From the sequence record LC667451.1: a stretch of 64,000 nt of DNA; one strand, given 5' to 3'. This document shows positions 312 through 60,998 of the stretch, one piece after another (the first letter of the stretch is position 1; each line of letters begins with the position of its first letter). Both the position numbers and the translations under genes were made by a program. The notes beneath the pieces were generated by a model, which saw only the letters and a list, made by a program, of their open reading frames with translations, was not told the DNA's origin and made no database searches.

Positions 312-578
312 TGTAACCCCAAGTAGTAGTACCCTTTGTATTTGCCAAGCACCCCATTACAATCCGAAGCACTCATATCATTCGACGGCATATGGGGTCG
401 ATCACCAGCCTGTCCGCTCTGGACTTAGCCGGTGATCTCTTGGCACCCTCTCCGTCAATACGTGAGAAGCGTGTTCGCCCAAAATGTGGTAGATTGGCAC
501 TACTAAAGGAACCTACTTCCAGGCAGATAGACCGACGCGAATGTCCAACCTTTTGGTCTATCTGCCTAGCAATCACGC

Positions 579-2708
579 TTAGTGCGTGTCGCTTACAAGT
601 CTCGTAAGCTTGTCGTTTTGCATGTAAATGCCTAACGTTTCCAGGATGATGTAAAAGACCTTGGTCGCATCGGCGACGATCTTTCGCACCCCTGCCACCT
701 GCAGGATCTCTTTCGGAATACCGTTGGTTTGCAGGTTCTGCTCCGGTAGCTGCACGGCACCCAGGTAGCGCTTGTTCATGCGCTTCATGTAGTTTTCCAT
801 GCGCTCGGCCAACTGACGGTCTTCCAGACCATCCAGCCATTCCTTGGTCTTGGTCGGCGTGTCGAGATCGGTGGCGATCTTAACGCAAGTATAGGGGACC
901 GGGGGAGCCACGCCATACTTGGGACCGAAGACTTCATTCCACATCACGTACTGCTGGTACGGCGACTCGTGTGCTTCCTTCGCATATGACTCGGGTGGTT
1001 TGATCTGACCCATGCGGAAGAAGTGATATCCACCTTCGCCAATCGCTTCGAAGATCTGACGCTCGATGTCGCCGATCGTCTTCAGGATCTGCTGGATCTT
1101 GATCTTCTCGCCACGCAGTACCGAATTCATGATAAAGAGCATCATCTTCTCCGCTTCCTTCATCACGAAGCGCGGCGCATTGGACGCCTTCAAGTGCACG
1201 CCCTTGATCTCTTTCTTGTAATCCTTAAACAGGTTCCCTTCCTGGCAACCTATCAGTGCAAAGTAGTGCTTGGCCACCTGTGTCGGAATGAACACATCGA
1301 ACTTGAACTCGTTCTTCATCGCCACCTTGTGGATATACTTCTCGACGATCCCGAAGTTCGCACTCATACGTGCCAGCACGTGAATGATGGTCTGGGCTGC
1401 CAGGAACACCATCGATGCAGCCACTGCATTGCACTTCTCATCAAAACCCAGCCAACCCTGATGCCAAAGCACCCAGTCTTGCACGGTAAAGATGGTGGAA
1501 TCCGTATCCGAAGTCAACGCTGAACGACGGATCGAATCCGGGAAGAAGGCCAAAGACGCCGGAACGTTGGTCGTCACCCAGAAGGCGCGAATCAGGTCCC
1601 GATACTCTTCACCCACATCCCCAATGTTCTTGGCGGTTGCCGCCACAATCCCACGTGCTTCACCTTGAATCTCGTGCAGCTGCAAACCCTTGGTGTAGCG
1701 TTCGCAAATCTGACACGCCAGGTGCACGTGTTCTTCCATCACCTTCTTGATGATGCTATCCGGGTCCGGATGCGGCGTTTCCACCATCATCGAGAGCTTG
1801 GTCACGTACTCACGCACCACAGCTTCGTTGAACTTCATCAGGTGGTACAGATCCCCGGTGTAGACGAAGGCCGAGCGTTGTTCCGGCGTCAACGTCTTGA
1901 CCAGTCGATACACACGCAACAGTTGGAACTTGTCGCGCCAGTACAGATTGGTCGAGTAGGCGATGCACTCCATCGTCTCTTCCACTGTCGGATGACGAAT
2001 GCCGAACTTCTGCATGGCGTGCGCTTGCGCTTCGTAGTCCGTGTGGTTACAGATCGAGATGATGTTGTTCATCGTGATCTCGGGTGACCAGTAATGCCGA
2101 TTGCCTGAGAGGAACTTCTCGTTATTCGCGTTCCCGAACCCCGAGGTCGAGCGGCAGTTCGAGGTGAGCGTCGAGTGGGCTGTCTTGTTGTACAACGGCG
2201 TCGACGGGGAAACGTGGGCACCTGAGATGGAGTTGTTCGCCAGCTTCTTGTTGGTCTGCTCGTTATCCTTGATTTGCATCAGGACAATGTCGCCTTCCAT
2301 TTCCGCCTTGAACTTCGCCTTCTTGGCTACGCCCCGTGCCTTCACGTTGGCCTCGATGTAATCCACCAGAGGCGATTGCAAGACATCCGGGTGCAAGTAC
2401 GTGGTCAGCGTAGGTGCAATCAGTTCCCGGTTGCGAATCGAATCATTCAGGTAAGCACCCAGAGTGCCTTCCATGCGAACTCGATCCCCGTTGTCCCCGC
2501 GCTCCAGGTAAATGATCTTGGGGTCCTTGAACTCGAACTGACCACCAGGCTGCATCCCTGTCTTCACGAAGGTGATACATTCCTCACGGGTACTACCTGG
2601 CGACATCTGGTGCATGTATGCCGCCACATCCTGAACGTAGTCGCGCAACGGATTAATATCGCGCTTATAACTACTACTGGGCAAAACGAAGGGATTATCA
2701 GCTTCCAC
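579..2708 (-). CDS. Family-B DNA polymerase, catalytic subunit of the split phiKZ-type polymerase
   Basis: 709 aa. PolB motif C 'LTSDTDSTIF', motif-B-like 'KKLANNSISG' and 'KEIKGVHLK'. GTG start with AAGGAG SD (complement at 2718-2723). Confidence 0.9.
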   Translation of the reverse strand: MEADNPFVLPSSSYKRDINPLRDYVQDVAAYMHQMSPGSTREECITFVKTGMQPGGQFEFKDPKIIYLERGDNGDRVRMEGTLGAYLNDSIRNRELIAPTLTTYLHPDVLQSPLVDYIEANVKARGVAKKAKFKAEMEGDIVLMQIKDNEQTNKKLANNSISGAHVSPSTPLYNKTAHSTLTSNCRSTSGFGNANNEKFLSGNRHYWSPEITMNNIISICNHTDYEAQAHAMQKFGIRHPTVEETMECIAYSTNLYWRDKFQLLRVYRLVKTLTPEQRSAFVYTGDLYHLMKFNEAVVREYVTKLSMMVETPHPDPDSIIKKVMEEHVHLACQICERYTKGLQLHEIQGEARGIVAATAKNIGDVGEEYRDLIRAFWVTTNVPASLAFFPDSIRRSALTSDTDSTIFTVQDWVLWHQGWLGFDEKCNAVAASMVFLAAQTIIHVLARMSANFGIVEKYIHKVAMKNEFKFDVFIPTQVAKHYFALIGCQEGNLFKDYKKEIKGVHLKASNAPRFVMKEAEKMMLFIMNSVLRGEKIKIQQILKTIGDIERQIFEAIGEGGYHFFRMGQIKPPESYAKEAHESPYQQYVMWNEVFGPKYGVAPPVPYTCVKIATDLDTPTKTKEWLDGLEDRQLAERMENYMKRMNKRYLGAVQLPEQNLQTNGIPKEILQVAGVRKIVADATKVFYIILETLGIYMQNDKLTRLVSDTH

Positions 2709-2766
2709 TTATTGTCACTCCTTGTCGACCTACAGGATCACGCAAGGGGATAAAAAACAAATCGAC

Positions 2767-2818
2767 GGCATAAAAAGGAAAAAGGAGAGGGACGATTCGG
2801 GCCGTCCCTCTCTAAGAC
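2767..2818 (-). terminator. Intrinsic terminator hairpin with TATGCC tail
   Basis: Stem GAGAGGGACG (2785-2794) / CGTCCCTCTC (2803-2812); on the minus strand followed by T-tracts and TATGCCG. Confidence 0.7.
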
Positions 2819-2895
2819 TACAGGTCGTTACAAAGCAAAGCTTACAGCATTCAACCGCTTGGTCGCGAAACCAACTTCCAGCTACCATCCAACTG

Positions 2896-3231
2896 AAATC
2901 GGGGTAGACCATTGGGGCTGACCCATTCTTAGTTCGCCACTCGACCGTTTTGGCAGGGAGACTCCCGATTAATGCGGCCATTGCGGGTGCGGAACCGCTC
3001 AAGCTGCAATCAGGACAGGGTCGAGCACGTGGCGAGCGCGTCACATCAGGGAAACAAGGAAGAAACCCAAAGTAACGGAATGAATCAGCCCCGGCCTAGG
3101 CAATGGCGCGGTGGCTCTTGCGAGCTCGCGCAGGAGTTCTCGATCATTTGCAGGCGGGAGGAGGAACCGCATGGATAATCGAGCACGGGCTTGCCGGGCC
3201 CTTCTCTTCAGAACATTACGGAACCCCGATA
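2896..3231 (+). ncRNA. Putative structured non-coding RNA A (~335 nt), family unknown
   Basis: No credible ORF. Nested helices 2898-2905/3223-3230, 2913-2921/3085-3093, 2932-2946/3019-3037, 2981-2986/3004-3009 and 3113-3122/3129-3138. G-U wobbles form only on the + strand. Confidence 0.6.
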
Positions 3232-4097: not shown

Positions 4098-4495
4098 AAG
4101 TTCGGGTTGATGTTATCCACGATCAGGCGCTGCAAGACCAAGTCATTGCCGTACCAATCGTGGAACTGGTAATACAGGTAGCCGTTTTGGTAGGCGCGCA
4201 GATACTTCAGCTTTTGCAAGACATCTTCGCCAAAGCTGTGAATCAAACGCGCCAACTTGATGTACGCTGTTTCATGAGCGTCGCCGAGTTCGTTCCGGAT
4301 CAGTTCGAGCGCCGCGTATTGCAACTCCATGCGGGCATGCTGCTCGTACATGATTGAGTCGAGCACAATCTGGGCGATCGTGTTCGGCATCAGGAAGTCA
4401 AACTCGCCAGCGCCTTTGATAAGCTCGCGCAAACCCGCATCTGTATCCAACACCAGGAGCGTCGGATAGTGTTGGGCCTGAACCGAAGCCCTCAA
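4094..4495 (-). CDS. Hypothetical protein, array member (likely TTG start at 4495)
   Basis: Coding-like from 'LRASVQAQHYPTLLVLD'; C-terminal 'YLYYQFHDWYGNDLVL'. The upstream part of track ORF 4094-4756 lies within the next gene. Confidence 0.7.
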   Translation of the reverse strand: MRASVQAQHYPTLLVLDTDAGLRELIKGAGEFDFLMPNTIAQIVLDSIMYEQHARMELQYAALELIRNELGDAHETAYIKLARLIHSFGEDVLQKLKYLRAYQNGYLYYQFHDWYGNDLVLQRLIVDNINPNL

Positions 4496-4928
4496 AATCG
4501 GCTTTGGTGAGCCGGACAAGATGATCACTGTGGACCTCCGCAAACAGGTAAGGGAAGAAGCCGTCAGGCGGCAGGTAAGCGTGCAACTCGGTGACGAGGC
4601 GCTGATAGATCCCGAGGCCCAGTCGCATGACCGCTTCAAAGCGATCCCGATGTGGACCTCGAGGTATGTCGGCCTCTTCAATGCGCACATCACCCTGAAT
4701 GGCATCGTAAGCGAAGCTGATCGCATACTCGACCAGATTCTCCTCAGCGAATTCATTCACGGTAATGGCGGAGAACACGTTATCCAAAACTTCCCGCAAA
4801 TCAAAAGGAGGCATGAAAGGCAGTGTGGTCACTTGCAGGAAACCACCGATCTCAGCCGTCAAATCAATAAGCAGGTTTTCAGATAGCACGCCGTCTTCCC
4901 CACTGCGAAGTGAGTGTTTCCACTCCAA
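4398..4928 (-). CDS. Hypothetical protein, array member (alternative GTG start at 4889)
   Basis: N-terminal 'NLLIDLT' and C-terminal 'GFFPYLFAEVHSDHLVRL' pattern. Confidence 0.7.
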   Translation of the reverse strand: MEWKHSLRSGEDGVLSENLLIDLTAEIGGFLQVTTLPFMPPFDLREVLDNVFSAITVNEFAEENLVEYAISFAYDAIQGDVRIEEADIPRGPHRDRFEAVMRLGLGIYQRLVTELHAYLPPDGFFPYLFAEVHSDHLVRLTKADFEGFGSGPTLSDAPGVGYRCGFARAYQRRWRV

Positions 4929-5832: not shown

Positions 5833-6624
5833 TTAATCGTCGTAACCGCGACCATGCTCGAGCATCCACGAGTAAATCCGATAATCGATGGTTTTCTCCA
5901 CCGTCATCTGCGTGTTGCTCACTTTTGAGAAGTGCATGATCCAGCGATCCGTGCCCAGGAACTCCAGCAGCTGTTGGAACAAGTCATTCAGCTGCAAGAG
6001 TATCGAGTCACAGATGTCGATACCCATGTAGAAAAATTGCTTTTCCTGCTCCGACACCAGATCGATTTCAACATGGTGCTTGTGCTTCATGGTTCGCGCC
6101 CGGCCACGGACGTACTCGATCTCTTGGGTATTAACCGCGCCCTCGATACTGATGCCTGAGCGTTGGAACTGCTCGAGCAGAAACGGCCTGATCACCCCGT
6201 ACAGATTGGTCTGCTTGGGACCGACCTTGGGCATCTGCTGGCTGCCTGACCAGCGCGCATGATTCTGCACGATATGGTCAATCAAGTCGACAATCATGTT
6301 CCGACTGCGCAGCGACCACAGCGGCTTGTCGCTTAAGAGCGAGGCTTGTTTGTGTACGAGTACGAGGTCGCCCTTGTGGTCGAGCACGTCACCCAGAATA
6401 GGCTGATTCCAGTTAAAGGGAATCGCTTCCGCAACATCGCCAGTCGGACCTGTTGCGCGACCAGCGTAAAAGTACTTGCGGTCCCGATACAACACAGGCT
6501 CACATTGGCCCGCCATAAACAAACCTTCCGGATTCGGCAGCATGAACGATCCGGCAGCAGCTTCGACTGCCTGGATGTAGTCTGCGAGTTCCAGCATTAG
6601 CGTTCCTGCGATTTTCAGTTCCAT
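5833..6624 (-). CDS. Hypothetical protein (263 aa), enlarged array member
   Basis: 'TLMLELADY' N-terminus; long open frame; coupled overlap with the upstream gene. Confidence 0.75.
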   Translation of the reverse strand: MELKIAGTLMLELADYIQAVEAAAGSFMLPNPEGLFMAGQCEPVLYRDRKYFYAGRATGPTGDVAEAIPFNWNQPILGDVLDHKGDLVLVHKQASLLSDKPLWSLRSRNMIVDLIDHIVQNHARWSGSQQMPKVGPKQTNLYGVIRPFLLEQFQRSGISIEGAVNTQEIEYVRGRARTMKHKHHVEIDLVSEQEKQFFYMGIDICDSILLQLNDLFQQLLEFLGTDRWIMHFSKVSNTQMTVEKTIDYRIYSWMLEHGRGYDD

Positions 6625-7019
6625 TTTCTTTCGTAGCTGTAGTTAGAGGCCCAGTGGGTTTGCTTGAAATACCACAAGTACAGATCAATCCCACGAACGT
6701 CCAAGTCGATGTAACAATGCTCCCCGTACAACTGTGGAACTTTGATGTATAGTCCTGTCAGATGGTCCAGATCTATCATGTTGCGCACACGATCGTACAG
6801 GCGACGATACTTCCAGTCACGGGAGTCGTGACGCGTGCTCAACAGATAATAGACCCGTTCAACGGTTTCTTTCACGATCCATTCGACCACCTGCTCCTCG
6901 GTCAGTCCCTGATCCGAGATTTCATCCGCAATGCCCCTGACCGCCTTTCGCAGGATGGTCAGGAAGTCGTTAGCATCCTGAATCAGCAAAGCCTGTGGGG
7001 TGACGGTAAGTAGGTCCAT
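6615..7019 (-). CDS. Hypothetical protein (134 aa), first array member
   Basis: AAGGAG SD; 'ALLIQDANDF' N-terminus and 'VRGIDLYLWY' C-terminus. Confidence 0.75.
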   Translation of the reverse strand: MDLLTVTPQALLIQDANDFLTILRKAVRGIADEISDQGLTEEQVVEWIVKETVERVYYLLSTRHDSRDWKYRRLYDRVRNMIDLDHLTGLYIKVPQLYGEHCYIDLDVRGIDLYLWYFKQTHWASNYSYERKWN

Positions 7020-7079
7020 AATAGCTCCTTATACAAACCATACGCCGGTTACGTTTGTTTTACCTTCGCATGGTCCAAC

Positions 7080-7139
7080 GGCATAAAAAAATAATCAGTC
7101 CCATTTGTACCCTCTTTTGGAGAAGGCATAAATGGGACT
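7080..7139 (-). terminator. Intrinsic terminator with TATGCC tail
   Basis: 10-bp stem AGTCCCATTT (7097-7106) / AAATGGGACT (7130-7139); on the minus strand followed by a T-rich tract and TATGCCG. Confidence 0.75.
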
Positions 7140-7140
7140 C

Positions 7141-7789
7141 GGCTCCCCCCACGAATTACCGTAATCAGACACTGGATGATCCAGGCTGAACGGAGTTACT
7201 GGGCAGGAGCCGGTCGGGACATCTCAAACACGAGCCAAGGGTTAGGTCCTAGTGCGATCTTCCAGACAGTCTGCAGACCATCTTTTTACCCGTCCCGTAG
7301 GCGGTGGACAGAAGCTTCGGATACTCCCTTGAAAACTGGCGTGTTTATTGCCTACTGCGCACCGGTGGTGGCAGTCTACTTGGTCTAACAGGTATCAAAG
7401 ACTTCCTAGCGCCTGAATGCACCCCCTACGCCTAATGCGCGGTTCGGCTGGTATGGAGCTAGGAGTCCGCGCATGGCCAAATCATCGGTCCGAATCAACA
7501 AGCCATGCGCGTCGCCTCAATGGCTGAAGGTACTACGGAGTCCCTTACCCCGCGTTGCCTTCCCCAGTCGGGGACGTCGCGCATGATGTCTATTCACCCC
7601 CAGACGCGCCTCCGGGAGTGAGGACCGATGAACTTTACGGTCAGCGGCGGCTTGAATCGACGGAAACCACGAAAAATCGTGATAGACAAACCGTGCGAAA
7701 TCACTCCACCACCACCTGGCCAACGATCTAAATTGGCCAAACATCGGTTCTTATTGCCTTTGTATCGTGGTTGGTCCGCTAACCCCGTG
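7141..7789 (+). ncRNA. Putative large structured non-coding RNA B (~650 nt), family unknown
   Basis: Gene-free. Helices 7141-7146/7206-7211, 7275-7280/7381-7386, 7297-7304/7348-7355, 7469-7477/7502-7510 and 7717-7723/7733-7739. Perfect 10-bp pairing 7482-7491/7622-7631 starts from a hairpin loop (pseudoknot). G-U wobbles favour the + strand. Confidence 0.6.
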
Positions 7790-8797
7790 TTACAGGATCA
7801 GGCCCGATTCTTCGTCCGCCTTGTCGCCGGAGCCCAGGAAGTTCTTCGGGCCACGACGAGCACCCTGGTCTTCCGTCAGCTGGGCGATCAGCTTCGTGAT
7901 GCGTTCGACCGCCTCGTGCAGCACGCCGTCGCTGGTCACGAAATGCACCGGCGATTGCTTGGCCACCGCCTCGTTGAGGTCCGCGGGCAGCAGGCCGAGG
8001 AAGCGCACTTCCGGCACCACCGGGAAGGTTGCATCCGCACCCGGCTTGGCGAGCGTCGCCACGCTGATGACATTGCCGATACCGTTGGGCGATTCGCCGC
8101 CGTTCAGGATCGTCAGTGCTGCCAGCATCGGCTGGTCGAACGTCGTGACCTTGTCGAAGCGCAACCAGTTGTACAGGTCGCGCGAATCGAGTTCGGCGTT
8201 TTCACGACTGAAGAGCACTGCCAGGCCTTCGACGAGCGCTTCGACGTTCTGGTCGACTTCGGCACGGGAAGCATCGCCGCTGTTTTCCAGGTACGCGATC
8301 ACGATCGGTGCCTTGACCGACTTGCGGGCGATGTGCTCGTACGATTTGAACGTGTTGAGCGTGTTCATCGCGTGCAGACGCGTCGATGCATCGCCGATCA
8401 TGATCACGATCGTCGGTTGATCGCGAGTGATCAGTTCTTCGACCAGCAGCGGACCGATAGCCGAACCCGAACCACCACCCGCCGTGTGAATGACGACGTT
8501 GATGGTGCCCGGCTTGTGGGCGTGCAGGATTTCCGGCAGACGCGGCTTGACTTCCGGCGCGATCTCGCGACGAATCTGGCCAGCGCCGTCCTTGCCTTCG
8601 ATCAGATAGATCGCATCGGCAGGCAGACCTTCGCGCAGGTTCGACTTCGACGAATCGATATACGAGATCGCCACGTTCGCGTAACCGGGGTCACGACGCG
8701 CGCGGAACTGCTCGAGGCGGCTGGCGATGTTGATGCCACCGCCGCCCGTTGCGTACACTTGCAACAGGCCTTTCACTTTCTCGATGTTTGCGGACAT
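7790..8797 (-). CDS. phuZ: PhuZ/TubZ phage tubulin (335 aa; start MSANIEK)
   Basis: 'ATGGGGINIA' N-terminal loop, tubulin signature 'TAGGGSGS', 'YIDSS', and an acidic C-terminal tail ending 'SGLIL'. AAGGAAAGGA SD upstream. Confidence 0.93.
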   Translation of the reverse strand: MSANIEKVKGLLQVYATGGGGINIASRLEQFRARRDPGYANVAISYIDSSKSNLREGLPADAIYLIEGKDGAGQIRREIAPEVKPRLPEILHAHKPGTINVVIHTAGGGSGSAIGPLLVEELITRDQPTIVIMIGDASTRLHAMNTLNTFKSYEHIARKSVKAPIVIAYLENSGDASRAEVDQNVEALVEGLAVLFSRENAELDSRDLYNWLRFDKVTTFDQPMLAALTILNGGESPNGIGNVISVATLAKPGADATFPVVPEVRFLGLLPADLNEAVAKQSPVHFVTSDGVLHEAVERITKLIAQLTEDQGARRGPKNFLGSGDKADEESGLIL

Positions 8798-8882
8798 GTT
8801 CCTTTCCTTGTTTTTAAACGGAGCATCACTCCTACATAGTAGGCTATGCTCGGGTAAAAAATGCCCAGCGTAAGCCGGGCAC

Positions 8883-9287: not shown

Positions 9288-9428
9288 GATAACTCCTTGG
9301 AGTGTTCTAGGGATAAAGGTAGAAGCTTTCTGCTTCAATTCAAGGACGTAATATAGGTCTGAAATCCGTTTCAATCGACTTTTTACACGCGATCCTATGT
9401 AGATTCTTTTTTTAACTGGAGGACCATA

Positions 9429-10235: not shown

Positions 10236-10270
10236 GTCATACGAGGCAGGGGTGACCCTGCCTCTATGCC
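10236..10270. terminator. Bidirectional hairpin GTCATA-stem-TATGCC between convergent genes
   Basis: GAGGCAGGG-GTGA-CCCTGCCTC stem. Confidence 0.75.
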
Positions 10271-10278
10271 GTTGTGGC

Positions 10279-13173: not shown

Positions 13174-13259
13174 GATGTTAGGCTCCTGAATCAGAATTGG
13201 AAAGAATGGTAAAGACGGCATACTGGCTAAGGGTTGCCCCCTAGCCGCTAGGTCGTCGA

Positions 13260-13842: not shown

Positions 13843-13889
13843 TGAATCGAGATTTGACGGCATAAAGGCCAGGATCGACCCCGGCCCAA

Positions 13890-28508: not shown

Positions 28509-28545
28509 GTCATAGACGGGGACCCGAAGGTCCCCGTCTTATGCC
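28509..28545. terminator. GTCATA-hairpin-TATGCC bidirectional element
   Basis: GACGGGGAC-CCGAAG-GTCCCCGTC stem (UUCG loop on the minus strand); A-tract on the left. Confidence 0.78.
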
Positions 28546-28553
28546 GTCGATAA

Positions 28554-50804: not shown

Positions 50805-50808
50805 TGAC

Positions 50809-50845
50809 GGCATAGCGCCCAGGGGTGACCCTGGGCGTCTATGAC
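50809..50845. terminator. GGCATA-hairpin-TATGAC bidirectional element
   Basis: GCGCCCAGG-GGTGA-CCCTGGGCGT stem between convergent genes. Confidence 0.75.
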
Positions 50846-54308: not shown

Positions 54309-54316
54309 GTAATATA
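54309..54316 (-). promoter_or_regulatory. phiKZ-type early promoter core TATATTAC
   Basis: Exact match to the published phiKZ early consensus on the minus strand, in an AT-rich divergent gap. Confidence 0.5.
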
Positions 54317-60119: not shown

Positions 60120-60944
60120 ATGGACTCGCTTCAAACTCTGCGTCACCATCGTGACGTCGTGGCGCTGGAGACTTTCAGCGTCCAGACCCTCGATGTTACC
60201 AGCATGCTCAAGAAGGTCATGCCGGACATCAAGTCACACTTCAGTAACTTCGTCGCTCGCTTCTCCGCCAACGATAAACCGATCCCGCTCTCGCGCGATC
60301 AACGCAATTTCATCAAGCTGGTCGAGAAGCACAACTTCGTCGACATCAGCCCGCTGGCCGTGGTCGTACCCGAAGGCTTCGATGCCGACTTCGTCGTGCT
60401 TGGCAACGTGCTGCATCAGGCAGCGGACCATGCACTGAAGGTGCGTGACCTCCTGAATACGTACACCACGTATCTGGCGATGCTCATCACCAACGAGTTC
60501 CAGCGCTTCGAGACGAAGAACAGTGTACAGGTCTATCAGGGCATGCAAACCGAGCGTGAACAGGTCCTCAAGGAACTGGGTGCACTCTTCAAGCCGGGTA
60601 GCCACGAAACCAAGCGTCAGTACGGTCAGGTCGTCACCCGCAACAAGGACTGGGAAATCGTCTTCGGTGAAGTCGACACCCTCTCCAAGCAGATGAACTC
60701 CGTCGATCGCACCGCCCTGAACCACAAGGTGAAGGAAGCCGGTCAGTTGATGGACAAGGTCATCGGCATGCTCAAGGATGGCAAGCTGGAATCGAGCGCG
60801 CCCGAAGTCGCCCAGGAACTTGCCGAAGGTGCGTTCCAGATCGCGAGCGAGCTCGAGTTCTTCTCCGTCATTTACTACCGCGTGATGGCCTACGTCACGT
60901 CGGTGAACACCACCGTCGACAAGATCACCGAGATCCTGAAGTAA
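60120..60944 (+). CDS. Putative virion head protein (274 aa)
   Basis: GAAGGA SD; N-terminal 'VVALE' protease-type site; strong codon bias; divergent from uvsX. Confidence 0.72.
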   Translation: MDSLQTLRHHRDVVALETFSVQTLDVTSMLKKVMPDIKSHFSNFVARFSANDKPIPLSRDQRNFIKLVEKHNFVDISPLAVVVPEGFDADFVVLGNVLHQAADHALKVRDLLNTYTTYLAMLITNEFQRFETKNSVQVYQGMQTEREQVLKELGALFKPGSHETKRQYGQVVTRNKDWEIVFGEVDTLSKQMNSVDRTALNHKVKEAGQLMDKVIGMLKDGKLESSAPEVAQELAEGAFQIASELEFFSVIYYRVMAYVTSVNTTVDKITEILK

Positions 60945-60945
60945 C

Positions 60946-60998
60946 GGCATAAACCCACTAGCTCACCCAATGGACCGGGTAGGCTAGTGGGTTATGAC
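60946..60998. terminator. GGCATA-hairpin-TATGAC bidirectional element
   Basis: AACCCACTAGC ... GCTAGTGGGTT stem between convergent genes. Confidence 0.75.

What the first reader, a model, noticed from the sequence alone, without database searches (positions are those of the whole stretch)
7141..7789. ~650-nt pseudoknotted ncRNA candidate, antisense between PhuZ and the paralog array
Seen in sequence: a 650-nt gap in an otherwise densely packed genome, full of nested helices (7141-7146/7206-7211, 7275-7280/7381-7386, 7297-7304/7348-7355, 7437-7449/7457-7472, 7469-7477/7502-7510, 7717-7723/7733-7739). The loop of the 7469-7510 hairpin contains TCATCGGTCC (7482-7491), the perfect complement of GGACCGATGA (7622-7631), giving a long-range pseudoknot. 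Several helices need G-U pairs that exist only on the + strand, so the RNA would be antisense to both neighbours and not merely a UTR. Segment 7469-7472 has two mutually exclusive partners, which hints at a switch. I found no hallmark motifs of tmRNA, RNase P, or group I/II introns. Inference: a large ornate phage RNA (GOLLD/ROOL size class, possibly new) in a nucleus-forming phage.
Basis: partly seen in the sequence, partly recalled or inferred. Interest (0 to 1): 0.85.

Follow-up and report, generated by a model that had tools for sequence, protein, structure and literature searches.

The report
Structured phage RNA overlapping a hidden small gene
The "empty" 770 bases after the tubulin gene of Burkholderia jumbo phage FLC9 hold, on the same strand as the neighbouring genes, an unannotated 75-codon gene fused to a conserved, elaborately folded RNA of about 650 bases that matches no known RNA family.

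Summary
The gap is real, and it is more conserved at the nucleotide level than the flanking genes. It folds better than shuffled controls. In 15-17 related phage contigs it shows strong compensatory base-pair changes: 85 of 205 pairs full-length, and 26 of 42 in the core.

- **Strand.** The RNA is on the minus strand, co-oriented with phuZ. It ends in an intrinsic terminator at 7139-7097 plus a U-tract. It is not antisense.
- **Coding.** The gap is not purely non-coding. A 74-85-codon ORF (7744-7517, minus) is open in 17 of 17 relatives. Its first ~40 codons change almost only synonymously. Its second half is frozen or compensated at the RNA level.
- **Family.** No Rfam family matches, including GOLLD and ROOL.

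One arm sits in the loop of a covarying hairpin. The other can also pair with the small gene's start codon.

Best reading: a phuZ-linked dual-function transcript, in which a small-protein mRNA is merged with a new large structured RNA whose fold probably gates translation or forms an RNP. The function is untested. The element is new and clade-restricted, and a ~47-base core is weakly detectable in more distant relatives.

The parts
7790..8797 (-). phuZ (FLC9 gp11), the upstream neighbour. The element probably sits on the 3' part of its transcript.
   Evidence: PHROG 4733 tubulin PhuZ, E=7.7e-79. Annotated only as hypothetical protein.
7745..7789 (-). Spacer between the phuZ stop and the small ORF. 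It carries an SD-like AAAGG/AAGGA/AGGAG 9-17 nt upstream of the ATG. I saw no terminator-like hairpin and neither candidate promoter motif.
   Evidence: Alignments. Upstream-region comparison.
7517..7744 (-). Unannotated small ORF of 75 codons plus TGA: MFGQFRSLARWWWSDFARFVYHDFSWFPSIQAAADRKVHRSS...STFSH. The N-terminal ~40 codons are under protein-level purifying selection. The C-terminal half overlaps the RNA core.
   Evidence: Open for 74-85 codons in 17 of 17 relatives. pN/pS is 0.24 in frame against 1.08 and 3.23 out of frame. The 25 lowest 111-nt windows of both strands and all phases are all in this frame. Per-codon table. With 16 sequences the ratio is 0.27-0.42 N-terminally and 0.77-0.89 C-terminally.
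7742..7748 (-). Box X1: ACCGAUG, containing the small ORF's start codon. It is complementary to CAUCGGU of the anti-box.
   Evidence: Invariant in 16 of 17. L097 has C->U, which keeps a G.U pair (helix 2).
7622..7632 (-). Anti-box: UUCAUCGGUCC, in the junction before hairpin P-D. It can pair with X1 (7 bp) or with X2 (10 bp).
   Evidence: Invariant in 17 of 17 although it spans the codons VHRS, with no synonymous change.
7594..7621 (-). Hairpin P-D.
   Evidence: 8 of 10 pairs have compensatory changes in the 17-sequence core alignment (helix 1).
7526..7572 (-). Core hairpins P-E (CCC/GGG) and P-F (GAAGG...CCUUC with a conserved UAAGGG loop and GUAGUA bulge). This is the most deeply conserved part.
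   Evidence: helices 3-4 (7 of 13 pairs compensatory). It is the only part found by model R1 in the PhuZ-47% group: L111 E=0.0023 and L101 E=0.08.
7514..7524 (-). Small hairpin P-G. Its loop holds the small ORF's stop codon, TGA 7519-7517.
   Evidence: (helix 5).
7468..7511 (-). Hairpin P-H. The 10-bp stem covaries. The ~22-nt loop carries box X2, GGACCGAUGA (7491-7482), the candidate pseudoknot partner of the anti-box.
   Evidence: helix 6 (6 of 10 pairs compensatory). X2 is invariant except for A->G in L100, which keeps a U.G pair.
7354..7464 (-). Middle domain: long hairpin 7464-7404 with inner helices, then hairpins 7394-7377 and 7375-7354.
   Evidence: helices 14-18; 13 pairs with compensatory changes.
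7225..7347 (-). Three-tier stem domain: 7347-7335/7235-7225, 7331-7319/7249-7236, and distal helices. It includes an FLC9-only insertion at about 7302-7280.
   Evidence: helices 20-24 (25 pairs with compensatory changes). Insertion seen.
7140..7212 (-). Variable 3' hairpin domain with a closing stem that covaries. It occurs in three sequence versions across relatives.
   Evidence: helix 25 (6 of 10 compensatory). FLC9 against L009 is 90% identical here, against L004-L008 only 37-41%.
7082..7139 (-). Intrinsic terminator: 18-bp hairpin 7139-7097 followed by GAUUAUUUUUUUAUG. This is the 3' end of the element.
   Evidence: hairpin picked up as a pseudo-miRNA hit; helix 28, with G.U pairs that would be A.C on the plus strand.
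7078..7085 (-). TATGCCGT, a candidate phiKZ-type late promoter / transcription start for gp10. It is not part of the RNA but explains the invariant bases after the terminator.
   Evidence: 9 copies in the window against 1.34 expected. Positions upstream of genes. The phiKZ late-promoter consensus is TATG with transcription starting at the G (PMC4666361).

Best explanation
**Shown**
- The element is a minus-strand unit of about 650-700 nt, running from about 7760 to about 7085.
- It lies directly downstream of phuZ and ends at an intrinsic terminator.
- Its 5' third is a genuine but unannotated small gene of 75 codons.
- From codon ~38 onward, and for ~430 nt beyond the stop codon, the sequence is constrained as RNA: a set of covarying hairpins and multi-tier stems.
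- Three short boxes are almost invariant:
  - the start-codon box ACCGAUG;
  - the anti-box UCAUCGGUCC inside the ORF;
  - GGACCGAUGA in the loop of a covarying hairpin downstream of the stop.

**Inferred**
- The unit is co-transcribed with phuZ.
- The anti-box either occludes the start codon (7 bp) or is captured by the hairpin loop in a 10-bp pseudoknot. The fold of the RNA would thereby gate translation of the small protein.
- Conversely, ribosomes reading the ORF must melt the core, so 'translated' and 'folded' states exclude each other.
- The invariant loops and junctions suggest that the folded RNA also binds a partner. One candidate is the Arg-rich tail of its own product, which would make an autoregulatory RNP.

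The downstream biological role in the nucleus-forming phage's infection cycle is unknown.
For: **Conservation**
- The gap is 73-84% identical at the nucleotide level in relatives whose PhuZ protein is only 59-61% identical.
- Segment identities to FLC9 are 77-86% for 7517-7633 and 87-88% for the terminator. They are 66-68% for phuZ and 63-64% for gp10.

**Structure**
- With 8 sequences, 96.1% of cells are paired. 48 pairs show double changes, against 26.6 in shuffles (0 of 500 reach it) and 3-11 when partners are slid.
- In the 17-sequence core, 26 of 42 pairs are compensatory. The covariation score is 0.45, against 0.17 shuffled and 0.03-0.08 slid.
- With 15 full-length sequences, 85 of 205 pairs are compensatory, against 46.7 shuffled and 29-43 slid.

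**Strand**
- MFE is -266.6 (z -5.7) on minus and -241.3 (z -3.4) on plus.
- Alifold energy is -408 on minus and -377 on plus.
- G-U to A-C cells are 141:40 in WC-supported pairs.
- The terminator and U-run exist on minus only.

**Small ORF**

**Boxes**
- Invariance and wobble-preserving single changes are seen.
- In L101, 10-bp complementary boxes of different sequence lie 112 nt apart, comparable to the 140 nt between anti-box and X2 in FLC9. The upstream box is followed by a hairpin, as P-D follows the anti-box.

**Transcription context**
- I saw no terminator-like hairpin and neither candidate promoter motif between phuZ and the ORF.
Against: - There are no expression data, so transcription, RNA ends and translation are all inferred.
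- The three boxes are invariant, so pairing among them has no true covariation support. There are only two wobble-compatible changes and one possible compensated version in a distant, weakly supported relative.
- The SD-like element is 14-17 nt from the AUG in most members, which is long.
- Most gene calls on the fetched contigs skipped the ORF. No protein homologue exists in 1.8 to 5.8 billion sequences.
- The AlphaFold2 model is low-confidence, with pLDDT 59.
- The alignments hold only about 12 clearly distinct lineages, and related sequences inflate shuffle-based statistics.
- Long-range closing helices (for example 7590-7585/7223-7218) never vary and are unproven.
Confidence: 0.6

Rival explanations
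1. A stand-alone, trans-acting large structured RNA: an RNP scaffold, ribozyme or decoy. It would be processed from, or transcribed independently of, the phuZ message. The small ORF would be a secondary passenger and the invariant boxes would be tertiary contacts or partner-binding sites.
For: - Loops and junctions are conserved absolutely while stems covary.
- The P-E/P-F core persists in lineages where the overlapping ORF has a different sequence.
- The C-terminal half of the ORF shows no protein-level constraint.
Against: - The N-terminal 40 codons are clearly under protein selection.
- In all three lineage groups an ORF starts just after phuZ, runs through the core and stops just after it. 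This looks like a maintained coupling.
- I saw neither candidate promoter motif upstream of the element.
Confidence: 0.25
2. One reading: a plus-strand ~650-nt ncRNA, antisense to both neighbours, of the GOLLD/ROOL size class.
For: - Most helices are Watson-Crick and would also form on the plus strand.
- The plus strand also folds better than shuffles, with z -3.4 and -2.7.
Against: - Energies are lower on minus in every homologue tested.
- G-U to A-C cells are 141:40 in favour of minus.
- The terminator hairpin has four G.U positions and a U-run only on minus.
- The coding signal is on minus.
- The L100 and L097 box changes are wobble pairs on minus but A.C mismatches on plus.
- The only plus-specific G-U helix lies in an FLC9-only insertion.
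- There is no Rfam match.
Confidence: 0.04
3. A hok-like type I toxin arrangement. A small toxic peptide's mRNA would be kept silent by fold-back structures that hide its start codon, and activated by processing or refolding.
For: - It has a small ORF inside a long, highly structured mRNA.
- The start codon is complementary to a conserved internal box, with a competing third box.
Against: - The peptide is not a hydrophobic membrane-spanning helix. It is charged and aromatic N-terminally with a basic tail.
- No antisense RNA gene or promoter was detected.
- There was no hit when the ORF product was scanned against Pfam.
- The RNA is far larger than such mRNAs, and the host is a strictly lytic jumbo phage.
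Confidence: 0.06
4. There is no functional RNA. The conservation would reflect DNA-level signals such as promoters, a terminator, or a replication or packaging site, plus an ordinary small gene.
For: - The terminator and the TATGCCGT promoter motif are DNA/RNA signals and are invariant.
- The small gene is real.
Against: DNA-level sites do not predict 85 base pairs with compensatory double changes, 90-96% pairing, and slid-partner controls at one third to one half of that.
Confidence: 0.04

Closest known systems
GOLLD and ROOL large 'ornate' bacterial and phage RNAs (Rfam families; comparison from general knowledge plus the cmscan test)
   Same: It is several hundred nucleotides long, multi-domain and phage-associated. 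Its loops and junctions are conserved and its function is unknown.
   Different: There is no covariance-model match even at E<=10. It overlaps a translated-looking ORF. It sits on an mRNA 3' of phuZ rather than near tRNA genes. It is restricted to one clade of nucleus-forming phages.
Dual-function (coding plus structural or regulatory) RNAs such as RNAIII/hld, SgrS/SgrT and SR1/SR1P (from general knowledge)
   Same: One transcript carries both a small ORF and a conserved RNA structure.
   Different: Here the ORF physically overlaps the most conserved structured core over ~115 nt. The RNA part is much larger. No base-pairing target is known.
Long-range RNA-RNA control of translation: hok mRNA fold-back inhibition and the MS2 long-distance interaction (from general knowledge)
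   Same: The start-codon region is complementary to a distant conserved segment, and a third segment can compete for that partner.
   Different: There is no antisense RNA, no hydrophobic toxin and no homology. The pairings are inferred from invariance only.
Small RNAs described in giant Pseudomonas phages phiKZ and 201phi2-1 by ONT-cappable-seq (PMC11512511)
   Same: They are non-coding RNA elements in chimalliviruses that are conserved by genomic position.
   Different: Those candidates were filtered to under 250 bp and are mostly derived from 5' UTRs, for example upstream of a tail-protein gene. None is reported downstream of phuZ, and none is of this size or overlaps an ORF.
Lambda N/nut and HK022 put antitermination RNAs (from general knowledge)
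   Same: A small, basic, largely disordered phage protein and/or a structured RNA lies upstream of a terminator.
   Different: There is no sequence or structural similarity. FLC9-type phages transcribe with their own non-canonical RNA polymerases. Nothing here tests antitermination.

Membership tests
GOLLD / ROOL / other Rfam large RNAs (OLE, HEARO, raiA and others) | A match to the family covariance model at or near the gathering score. | tested here: not met
   cmscan against 4227 Rfam 15 families gave no gathering-level hit in the 64-kb window or in L009, L029, L030 or L043. At E<=10 on 6500-8500 and E<=5 on L003 and L043, only pseudo-miRNA or lncRNA noise appeared.
Group I / group II introns, RNase P RNA | A covariance-model match to the catalytic core. 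| tested here: not met
   Same cmscan runs.
tmRNA / tRNA | A tRNA-like domain, detected by ARAGORN. | tested here: not met
   0 genes in the window.
Conserved structured RNA (generic criterion) | Compensatory base-pair changes beyond controls in independent homologues. | tested here: met
   All covariation measures beat 500 of 500 shuffles, except the count of further pair types (46 and 3 of 500 shuffles reach it). All measures beat all slid-partner controls.
Conserved structured RNA (generic criterion) | Folding energy below dinucleotide shuffles. | tested here: met
   z = -5.7 (20 shuffles) and -3.75 (100 shuffles) on the minus strand.
Protein-coding gene (small ORF 7744-7517) | The frame is kept open in relatives, and substitutions are frame-specific and synonymous. 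| tested here: met
   The frame is open in 17 of 17. pN/pS is 0.24 in frame against 1.08 and 3.23 out of frame. The lowest windows of the whole region are all in this frame. This holds for the N-terminal ~40 codons only. For the C-terminal half the ratio is 0.77-0.89.
Protein-coding gene (small ORF 7744-7517) | Homologues in protein databases or a known domain. | tested here: not met
   No hit in the 5.8-billion word-indexed search, the 1.84-billion HMM search, or Pfam.
Type I toxin-antitoxin (hok/sok-like) | A hydrophobic membrane-spanning peptide and a cis-antisense RNA. | tested here: not met
   The peptide has charged residues throughout helices 2-24 and 28-41, plus a basic tail. No antisense promoter or terminator was found. 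Toxicity was not tested.
Intrinsic (rho-independent) terminator at 7139-7082 | A G+C-containing hairpin immediately followed by a U-run on the transcribed strand. | tested here: met
   There is an 18-bp hairpin with covarying and wobble pairs, followed by GAUUAUUUUUUUAUG, invariant in all relatives. The simple scanner missed it because the U-run starts 5 nt after the stem.
H-type pseudoknot / loop-junction tertiary helix (anti-box with X2) | Complementarity between a hairpin loop and an outside segment, supported by covariation. | tested here: inconclusive
   There are 10 perfect base pairs and both arms are invariant in 17 sequences. One A->G change keeps a U.G pair. L101 has a 10-bp complement of different sequence at a comparable spacing, but its homology is only weakly supported.

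The most novel reading that the evidence does not exclude
The element may be the best-preserved representative of a wider, unrecognised class of large structured RNAs encoded directly downstream of phuZ in many nucleus-forming (chimalli-) phages.

In this reading, an RNP is built on the P-E/P-F core. Translation of an overlapping short ORF is mechanistically coupled to RNA folding. The RNP would serve a step specific to the phage-nucleus lifestyle, such as control of early cytoskeleton expression or mRNA handling.

Several other lineages also carry 450-870-nt non-coding gaps after phuZ. These are L030, L101, L104-L108, L110 and L111. In two of them (L101 and L111) the ~47-nt core is weakly detectable.
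Probability: 0.25. Interest if true: 0.85.

Novelty: new variant of a known kind. Interest (0 to 1): 0.72.

Why it matters
- **A new RNA class.** Large, covariation-supported structured RNAs are rare and have repeatedly led to new biochemistry. This one is found in nucleus-forming jumbo phages. The RNA biology of these phages, covering transcription by phage polymerases and mRNA export from the phage nucleus, is almost unexplored.
- **An unusual overlap.** About 115 nt serve at once as the tail of a reading frame and as the most conserved RNA core. The start codon, an internal box and a hairpin loop form an invariant three-way complementarity. That gives a compact system for studying how translation and RNA folding exclude or control each other.
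- **Annotation.** FLC9 and its metagenomic relatives lack an annotation for a real small gene, and automatic gene callers place spurious antisense ORFs here.

Tried and rejected
- **Rfam scans.** Gathering and permissive scans of the window and relatives gave only noise. ARAGORN found nothing.
- **INPHARED blastn.** Only FLC9 itself matched. The nearest isolate PhuZ is 37% identical.
- **LucasX and RP12.** They keep the synteny but have no gap. Their downstream small proteins showed no evident resemblance to the ORF product by eye.
- **Collection scans with conserved motifs.**
  - IMG/VR returned only the 8 contigs already found through PhuZ.
  - The metagenome 17-mer scan gave 43 loci, of which only L043 was real.
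  - The genome collection gave 0 and then 15 hits. The 15 is about the number expected by chance, and I did not check them further.
- **Model R1.** It found nothing in L029, L030, L032, LucasX or RP12, and no second copy in the window.
- **Strand test by projection.** Projecting single-sequence MFE structures onto the alignment did not separate the strands, because most helices are Watson-Crick. I replaced it with alifold energies and G-U/A-C counts.
- **Alternative global fold.** The FLC9 MFE pairs 7585-7578 with 7511-7504. I rejected it because most lineages have a central mismatch there, whereas hairpin 7511-7501/7478-7468 is compensated.
- **5'-3' closing helix.** The pairing GCAAUAAGA/UUUUUAUGC was rejected because its 3' arm lies in or beyond the terminator U-tract and is explained by the TATG promoter.
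- **Readthrough of the phuZ stop.** Rejected because the ORF is in frame with phuZ in only some lineages (alignment).
- **Sigma-70 promoter scan.** Uninformative, as expected for a phage with its own RNA polymerases.
- **Literature.** Nothing on FLC9 and no description of a phuZ-downstream RNA.

Full report
**Identity and setting**

The window is the first 64 kb of Burkholderia glumae jumbo phage FLC9, LC667451.1, 321,833 bp. The finding lies between gp11 (7790-8797, minus) and gp10 (6615-7019, minus). Gp11 is the tubulin PhuZ by PHROG 4733, E=7.7e-79. No feature is annotated in 7020-7789. No tRNA or tmRNA is present in the window. No Rfam family matches at gathering thresholds or at E<=10.

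**The observation**

The region folds better than dinucleotide shuffles, and more so on the minus strand:

| Region | Strand | MFE (kcal/mol) | z-score |
|---|---|---|---|
| 7141-7789 | minus | -266.6 | -5.7 |
| 7141-7789 | plus | -241.3 | -3.4 |
| 7140-7640 | minus | -207 | -3.75 |
| 7140-7640 | plus | -193.5 | -2.7 |

Of the six ungapped segment pairs I tested, only one needs plus-strand G-U pairs. It lies in a 23-nt insertion unique to FLC9. A perfect 10-mer complement occurs in 18% of shuffles, so alone it is not remarkable.

**Relatives**

- PhuZ-based searches of IMG/VR gave 8 contigs with the downstream region.
- One metagenome contig, L043, came from a motif scan.
- A protein search with PhuZ, followed by contig look-ups, gave 9 more loci: L093-L100 and L103.
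- In all of these, PhuZ is 56-88% identical to FLC9 and the gap is present and alignable end to end.
- Some members are highly divergent. Core model scores are 61-106 bits, against 189-225 bits for the first set.
- The gap is more conserved than its neighbours:

| Segment | Nucleotide identity to FLC9 |
|---|---|
| 7517-7633 | 77-86% |
| Terminator | 87-88% |
| phuZ | 66-68% |
| gp10 | 63-64% |

**Structure**

Consensus folding gives about 30 helices. The pairing counts on three alignments are:

| Alignment | Cells paired | Pairs with double-sided changes | Shuffled mean (shuffles reaching observed) | Slid partners |
|---|---|---|---|---|
| 8 sequences | 96.1% | 48 | 26.6 (0 of 500) | 3-11 |
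| 17-sequence core, aligned to model R1 | 96.3% | 26 of 42 | 14.5 (0 of 500) | 3-9 |
| 15 full-length sequences | 89.9% | 85 of 205 | 46.7 (0 of 500) | 29-43 |

- The core covariation score is 0.45, against 0.17 shuffled and 0.03-0.08 slid.
- Well-supported elements are hairpins P-D (7621-7594), P-F (7562-7526) and P-H (7511-7468). The 7464-7404 domain, hairpin 7375-7354, the three-tier stem 7347-7225, the variable domain 7212-7140 and the terminator hairpin 7139-7097 are also supported.
- Long-range closing helices never vary and remain unproven.

**Strand**

The following all point to the minus strand:
- lower MFE in every homologue tested;
- lower alifold energy, -408 against -377;
- a G-U to A-C ratio of 141:40 in pairs selected by a strand-neutral criterion;
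- a hairpin plus U-run only on minus;
- the coding signal described next.

**A hidden gene**

On the minus strand an ORF runs from ATG 7744 to TGA 7519-7517 (75 codons).
- It is open in 17 of 17 relatives at 74-85 codons. The other two frames carry 39 and 69 stops in total.
- Codons 8-12 and 21-37 (LARWW, YHDFSWFPSIQAAA-RK) vary almost only synonymously.
- For codons 1-37, pN/pS is 0.24 in frame against 1.08 and 3.23 out of frame.
- The 25 lowest 111-nt windows, over both strands and all phases of the whole region, are all in this frame.
- From codon 38 on, invariant codons show no synonymous change at all, and the variable codons are the two arms of covarying stems. There the ratio is 0.77-0.89.
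- So the N-terminal ~40 residues are a selected peptide. AlphaFold2 predicts two helices at low confidence, pLDDT 59. The basic tail is dictated by RNA structure.
- No protein homologue exists.
- Most gene calls on the fetched contigs skipped the ORF. One called a spurious antisense ORF instead.

**The three boxes**

- UUCAUCGGUCC (7632-7622) is invariant in 17 of 17.
- GGACCGAUGA (7491-7482) sits in the loop of covarying hairpin P-H. It is invariant except for one A->G that keeps a U.G pair.
- ACCGAUG (7748-7742) contains the start codon. It is invariant except for one C->U that keeps a G.U pair.
- Both exceptions would be A.C mismatches on the plus strand.
The G/A change at 7468 is compensated in P-H only.

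**Boundaries and transcription**

- Between the phuZ stop and the ORF I saw no terminator-like hairpin plus U-run and neither candidate promoter motif.
- Elsewhere in the window, TATGCCGT occurs 9 times against 1.34 expected. It typically lies ~55-65 nt upstream of start codons.
- TATGCCGT matches the phiKZ late-promoter TATG, with transcription starting at the G (PMC4666361).
- One copy overlaps the U-tract at 7085-7078 and explains the invariant bases after the terminator.
- I therefore infer co-transcription of the element with phuZ and termination near 7085.

**Distribution**

- Loci with PhuZ at 27-46% identity (L029, L030, L032) and the isolates LucasX and RP12 give no model hit.
- In the PhuZ-47% group the gap is 680-870 nt. 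Model R1, run without filters, finds only the P-E/P-F core: L111 E=0.0023 and L101 E=0.08.
- In those loci too, an ORF starts just after phuZ, runs through the core and stops just after it.
- L101 has its own 10-bp complementary boxes 112 nt apart, comparable to the 140 nt in FLC9.
- This hints at a wider family but is not established.

**Interpretation**

- **Shown:** a minus-strand, conserved, covarying structured RNA of about 650 nt, fused to and overlapping a real small gene, ending at an intrinsic terminator, and belonging to no known family.
- **Inferred:** co-transcription with phuZ; gating of the start codon by the anti-box against capture of the anti-box by the P-H loop; mutual exclusion of translation and core folding; and possible binding of a protein partner.
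- **Literature:** small RNAs reported in giant phages are candidates under 250 bp, mostly from 5' UTRs (PMC11512511). Nothing like this element has been described.
- **Verdict:** The finding is real, new and interesting. Its function is open.

Noticed in passing
window 385-392, 2765-2772, 7078-7085, 13215-13222, 13857-13864, 50807-50814, 60944-60951 (minus); 10265-10272, 28540-28547 (plus): TATGCCGT occurs 9 times against 1.34 expected. It usually lies just after a terminator hairpin and about 55-65 nt upstream of a start codon. It is a likely phiKZ-type late (TATG) promoter / transcription-start motif for FLC9.
   Followed up: partly
window 9348-9355 (minus), upstream of gp12; also 54309-54316 (minus): TATATTAC resembles the AT-rich early-promoter motif of phiKZ-like phages as I recall it from memory. 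It would place gp12 and phuZ in an early transcription unit. There are 2 copies against 0.23 expected.
   Followed up: no
window 7140-7212 and the matching part of L003-L100: The 3' variable hairpin domain comes in three unrelated sequence versions. Their distribution does not follow the rest of the RNA: FLC9 against L009 is 90% identical here but 61-77% elsewhere. This suggests exchange of an RNA module by recombination.
   Followed up: partly
window 7475-7489 versus 7734-7747 (minus): The X2 loop and the 3' arm of hairpin P-H (CCGAUGAUUUGGCCA) are a near copy of the small ORF's initiation region (CCGAUGUUUGGCCA). This may be mimicry of the translation-initiation site.
   Followed up: no
L030 5018-5576; L110 about 2497-3170; L104-L108 downstream of phuZ; L101 3000-3680; L111 2497-3369: Several other chimallivirus lineages also have 450-870-nt stretches without convincing genes directly after phuZ. 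L030 folds only modestly better than shuffles (z -2.1). Only L101 and L111 show a weak match to the P-E/P-F core.
   Followed up: partly
window 7280-7302: A 23-nt insertion is present only in FLC9, inside the three-tier stem domain.
   Followed up: yes
L093 2852-3493 (minus); L097 1950-2204 (plus): Automatic gene calls on public contigs are inconsistent here. One contig has a spurious 213-aa antisense ORF across the element. One has an 84-aa call that corresponds to the small ORF. The other seven full-length contigs fetched with gene calls have none here.
   Followed up: yes
window 4398-4928: Annotated gp6 (4521-4886, plus) is the only plus-strand gene in a run of minus-strand genes. It is overlapped by a longer minus-strand ORF (4398-4928, 176 aa, TTG start), so the strand of this annotation may deserve a check.
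   Followed up: no
window 8850-8882 (minus): A second terminator-like hairpin (GCCCGGC...GCUGGGC followed by UUUUUU) lies between gp12 and phuZ. Short single-gene transcription units may therefore be typical of this region.
   Followed up: no
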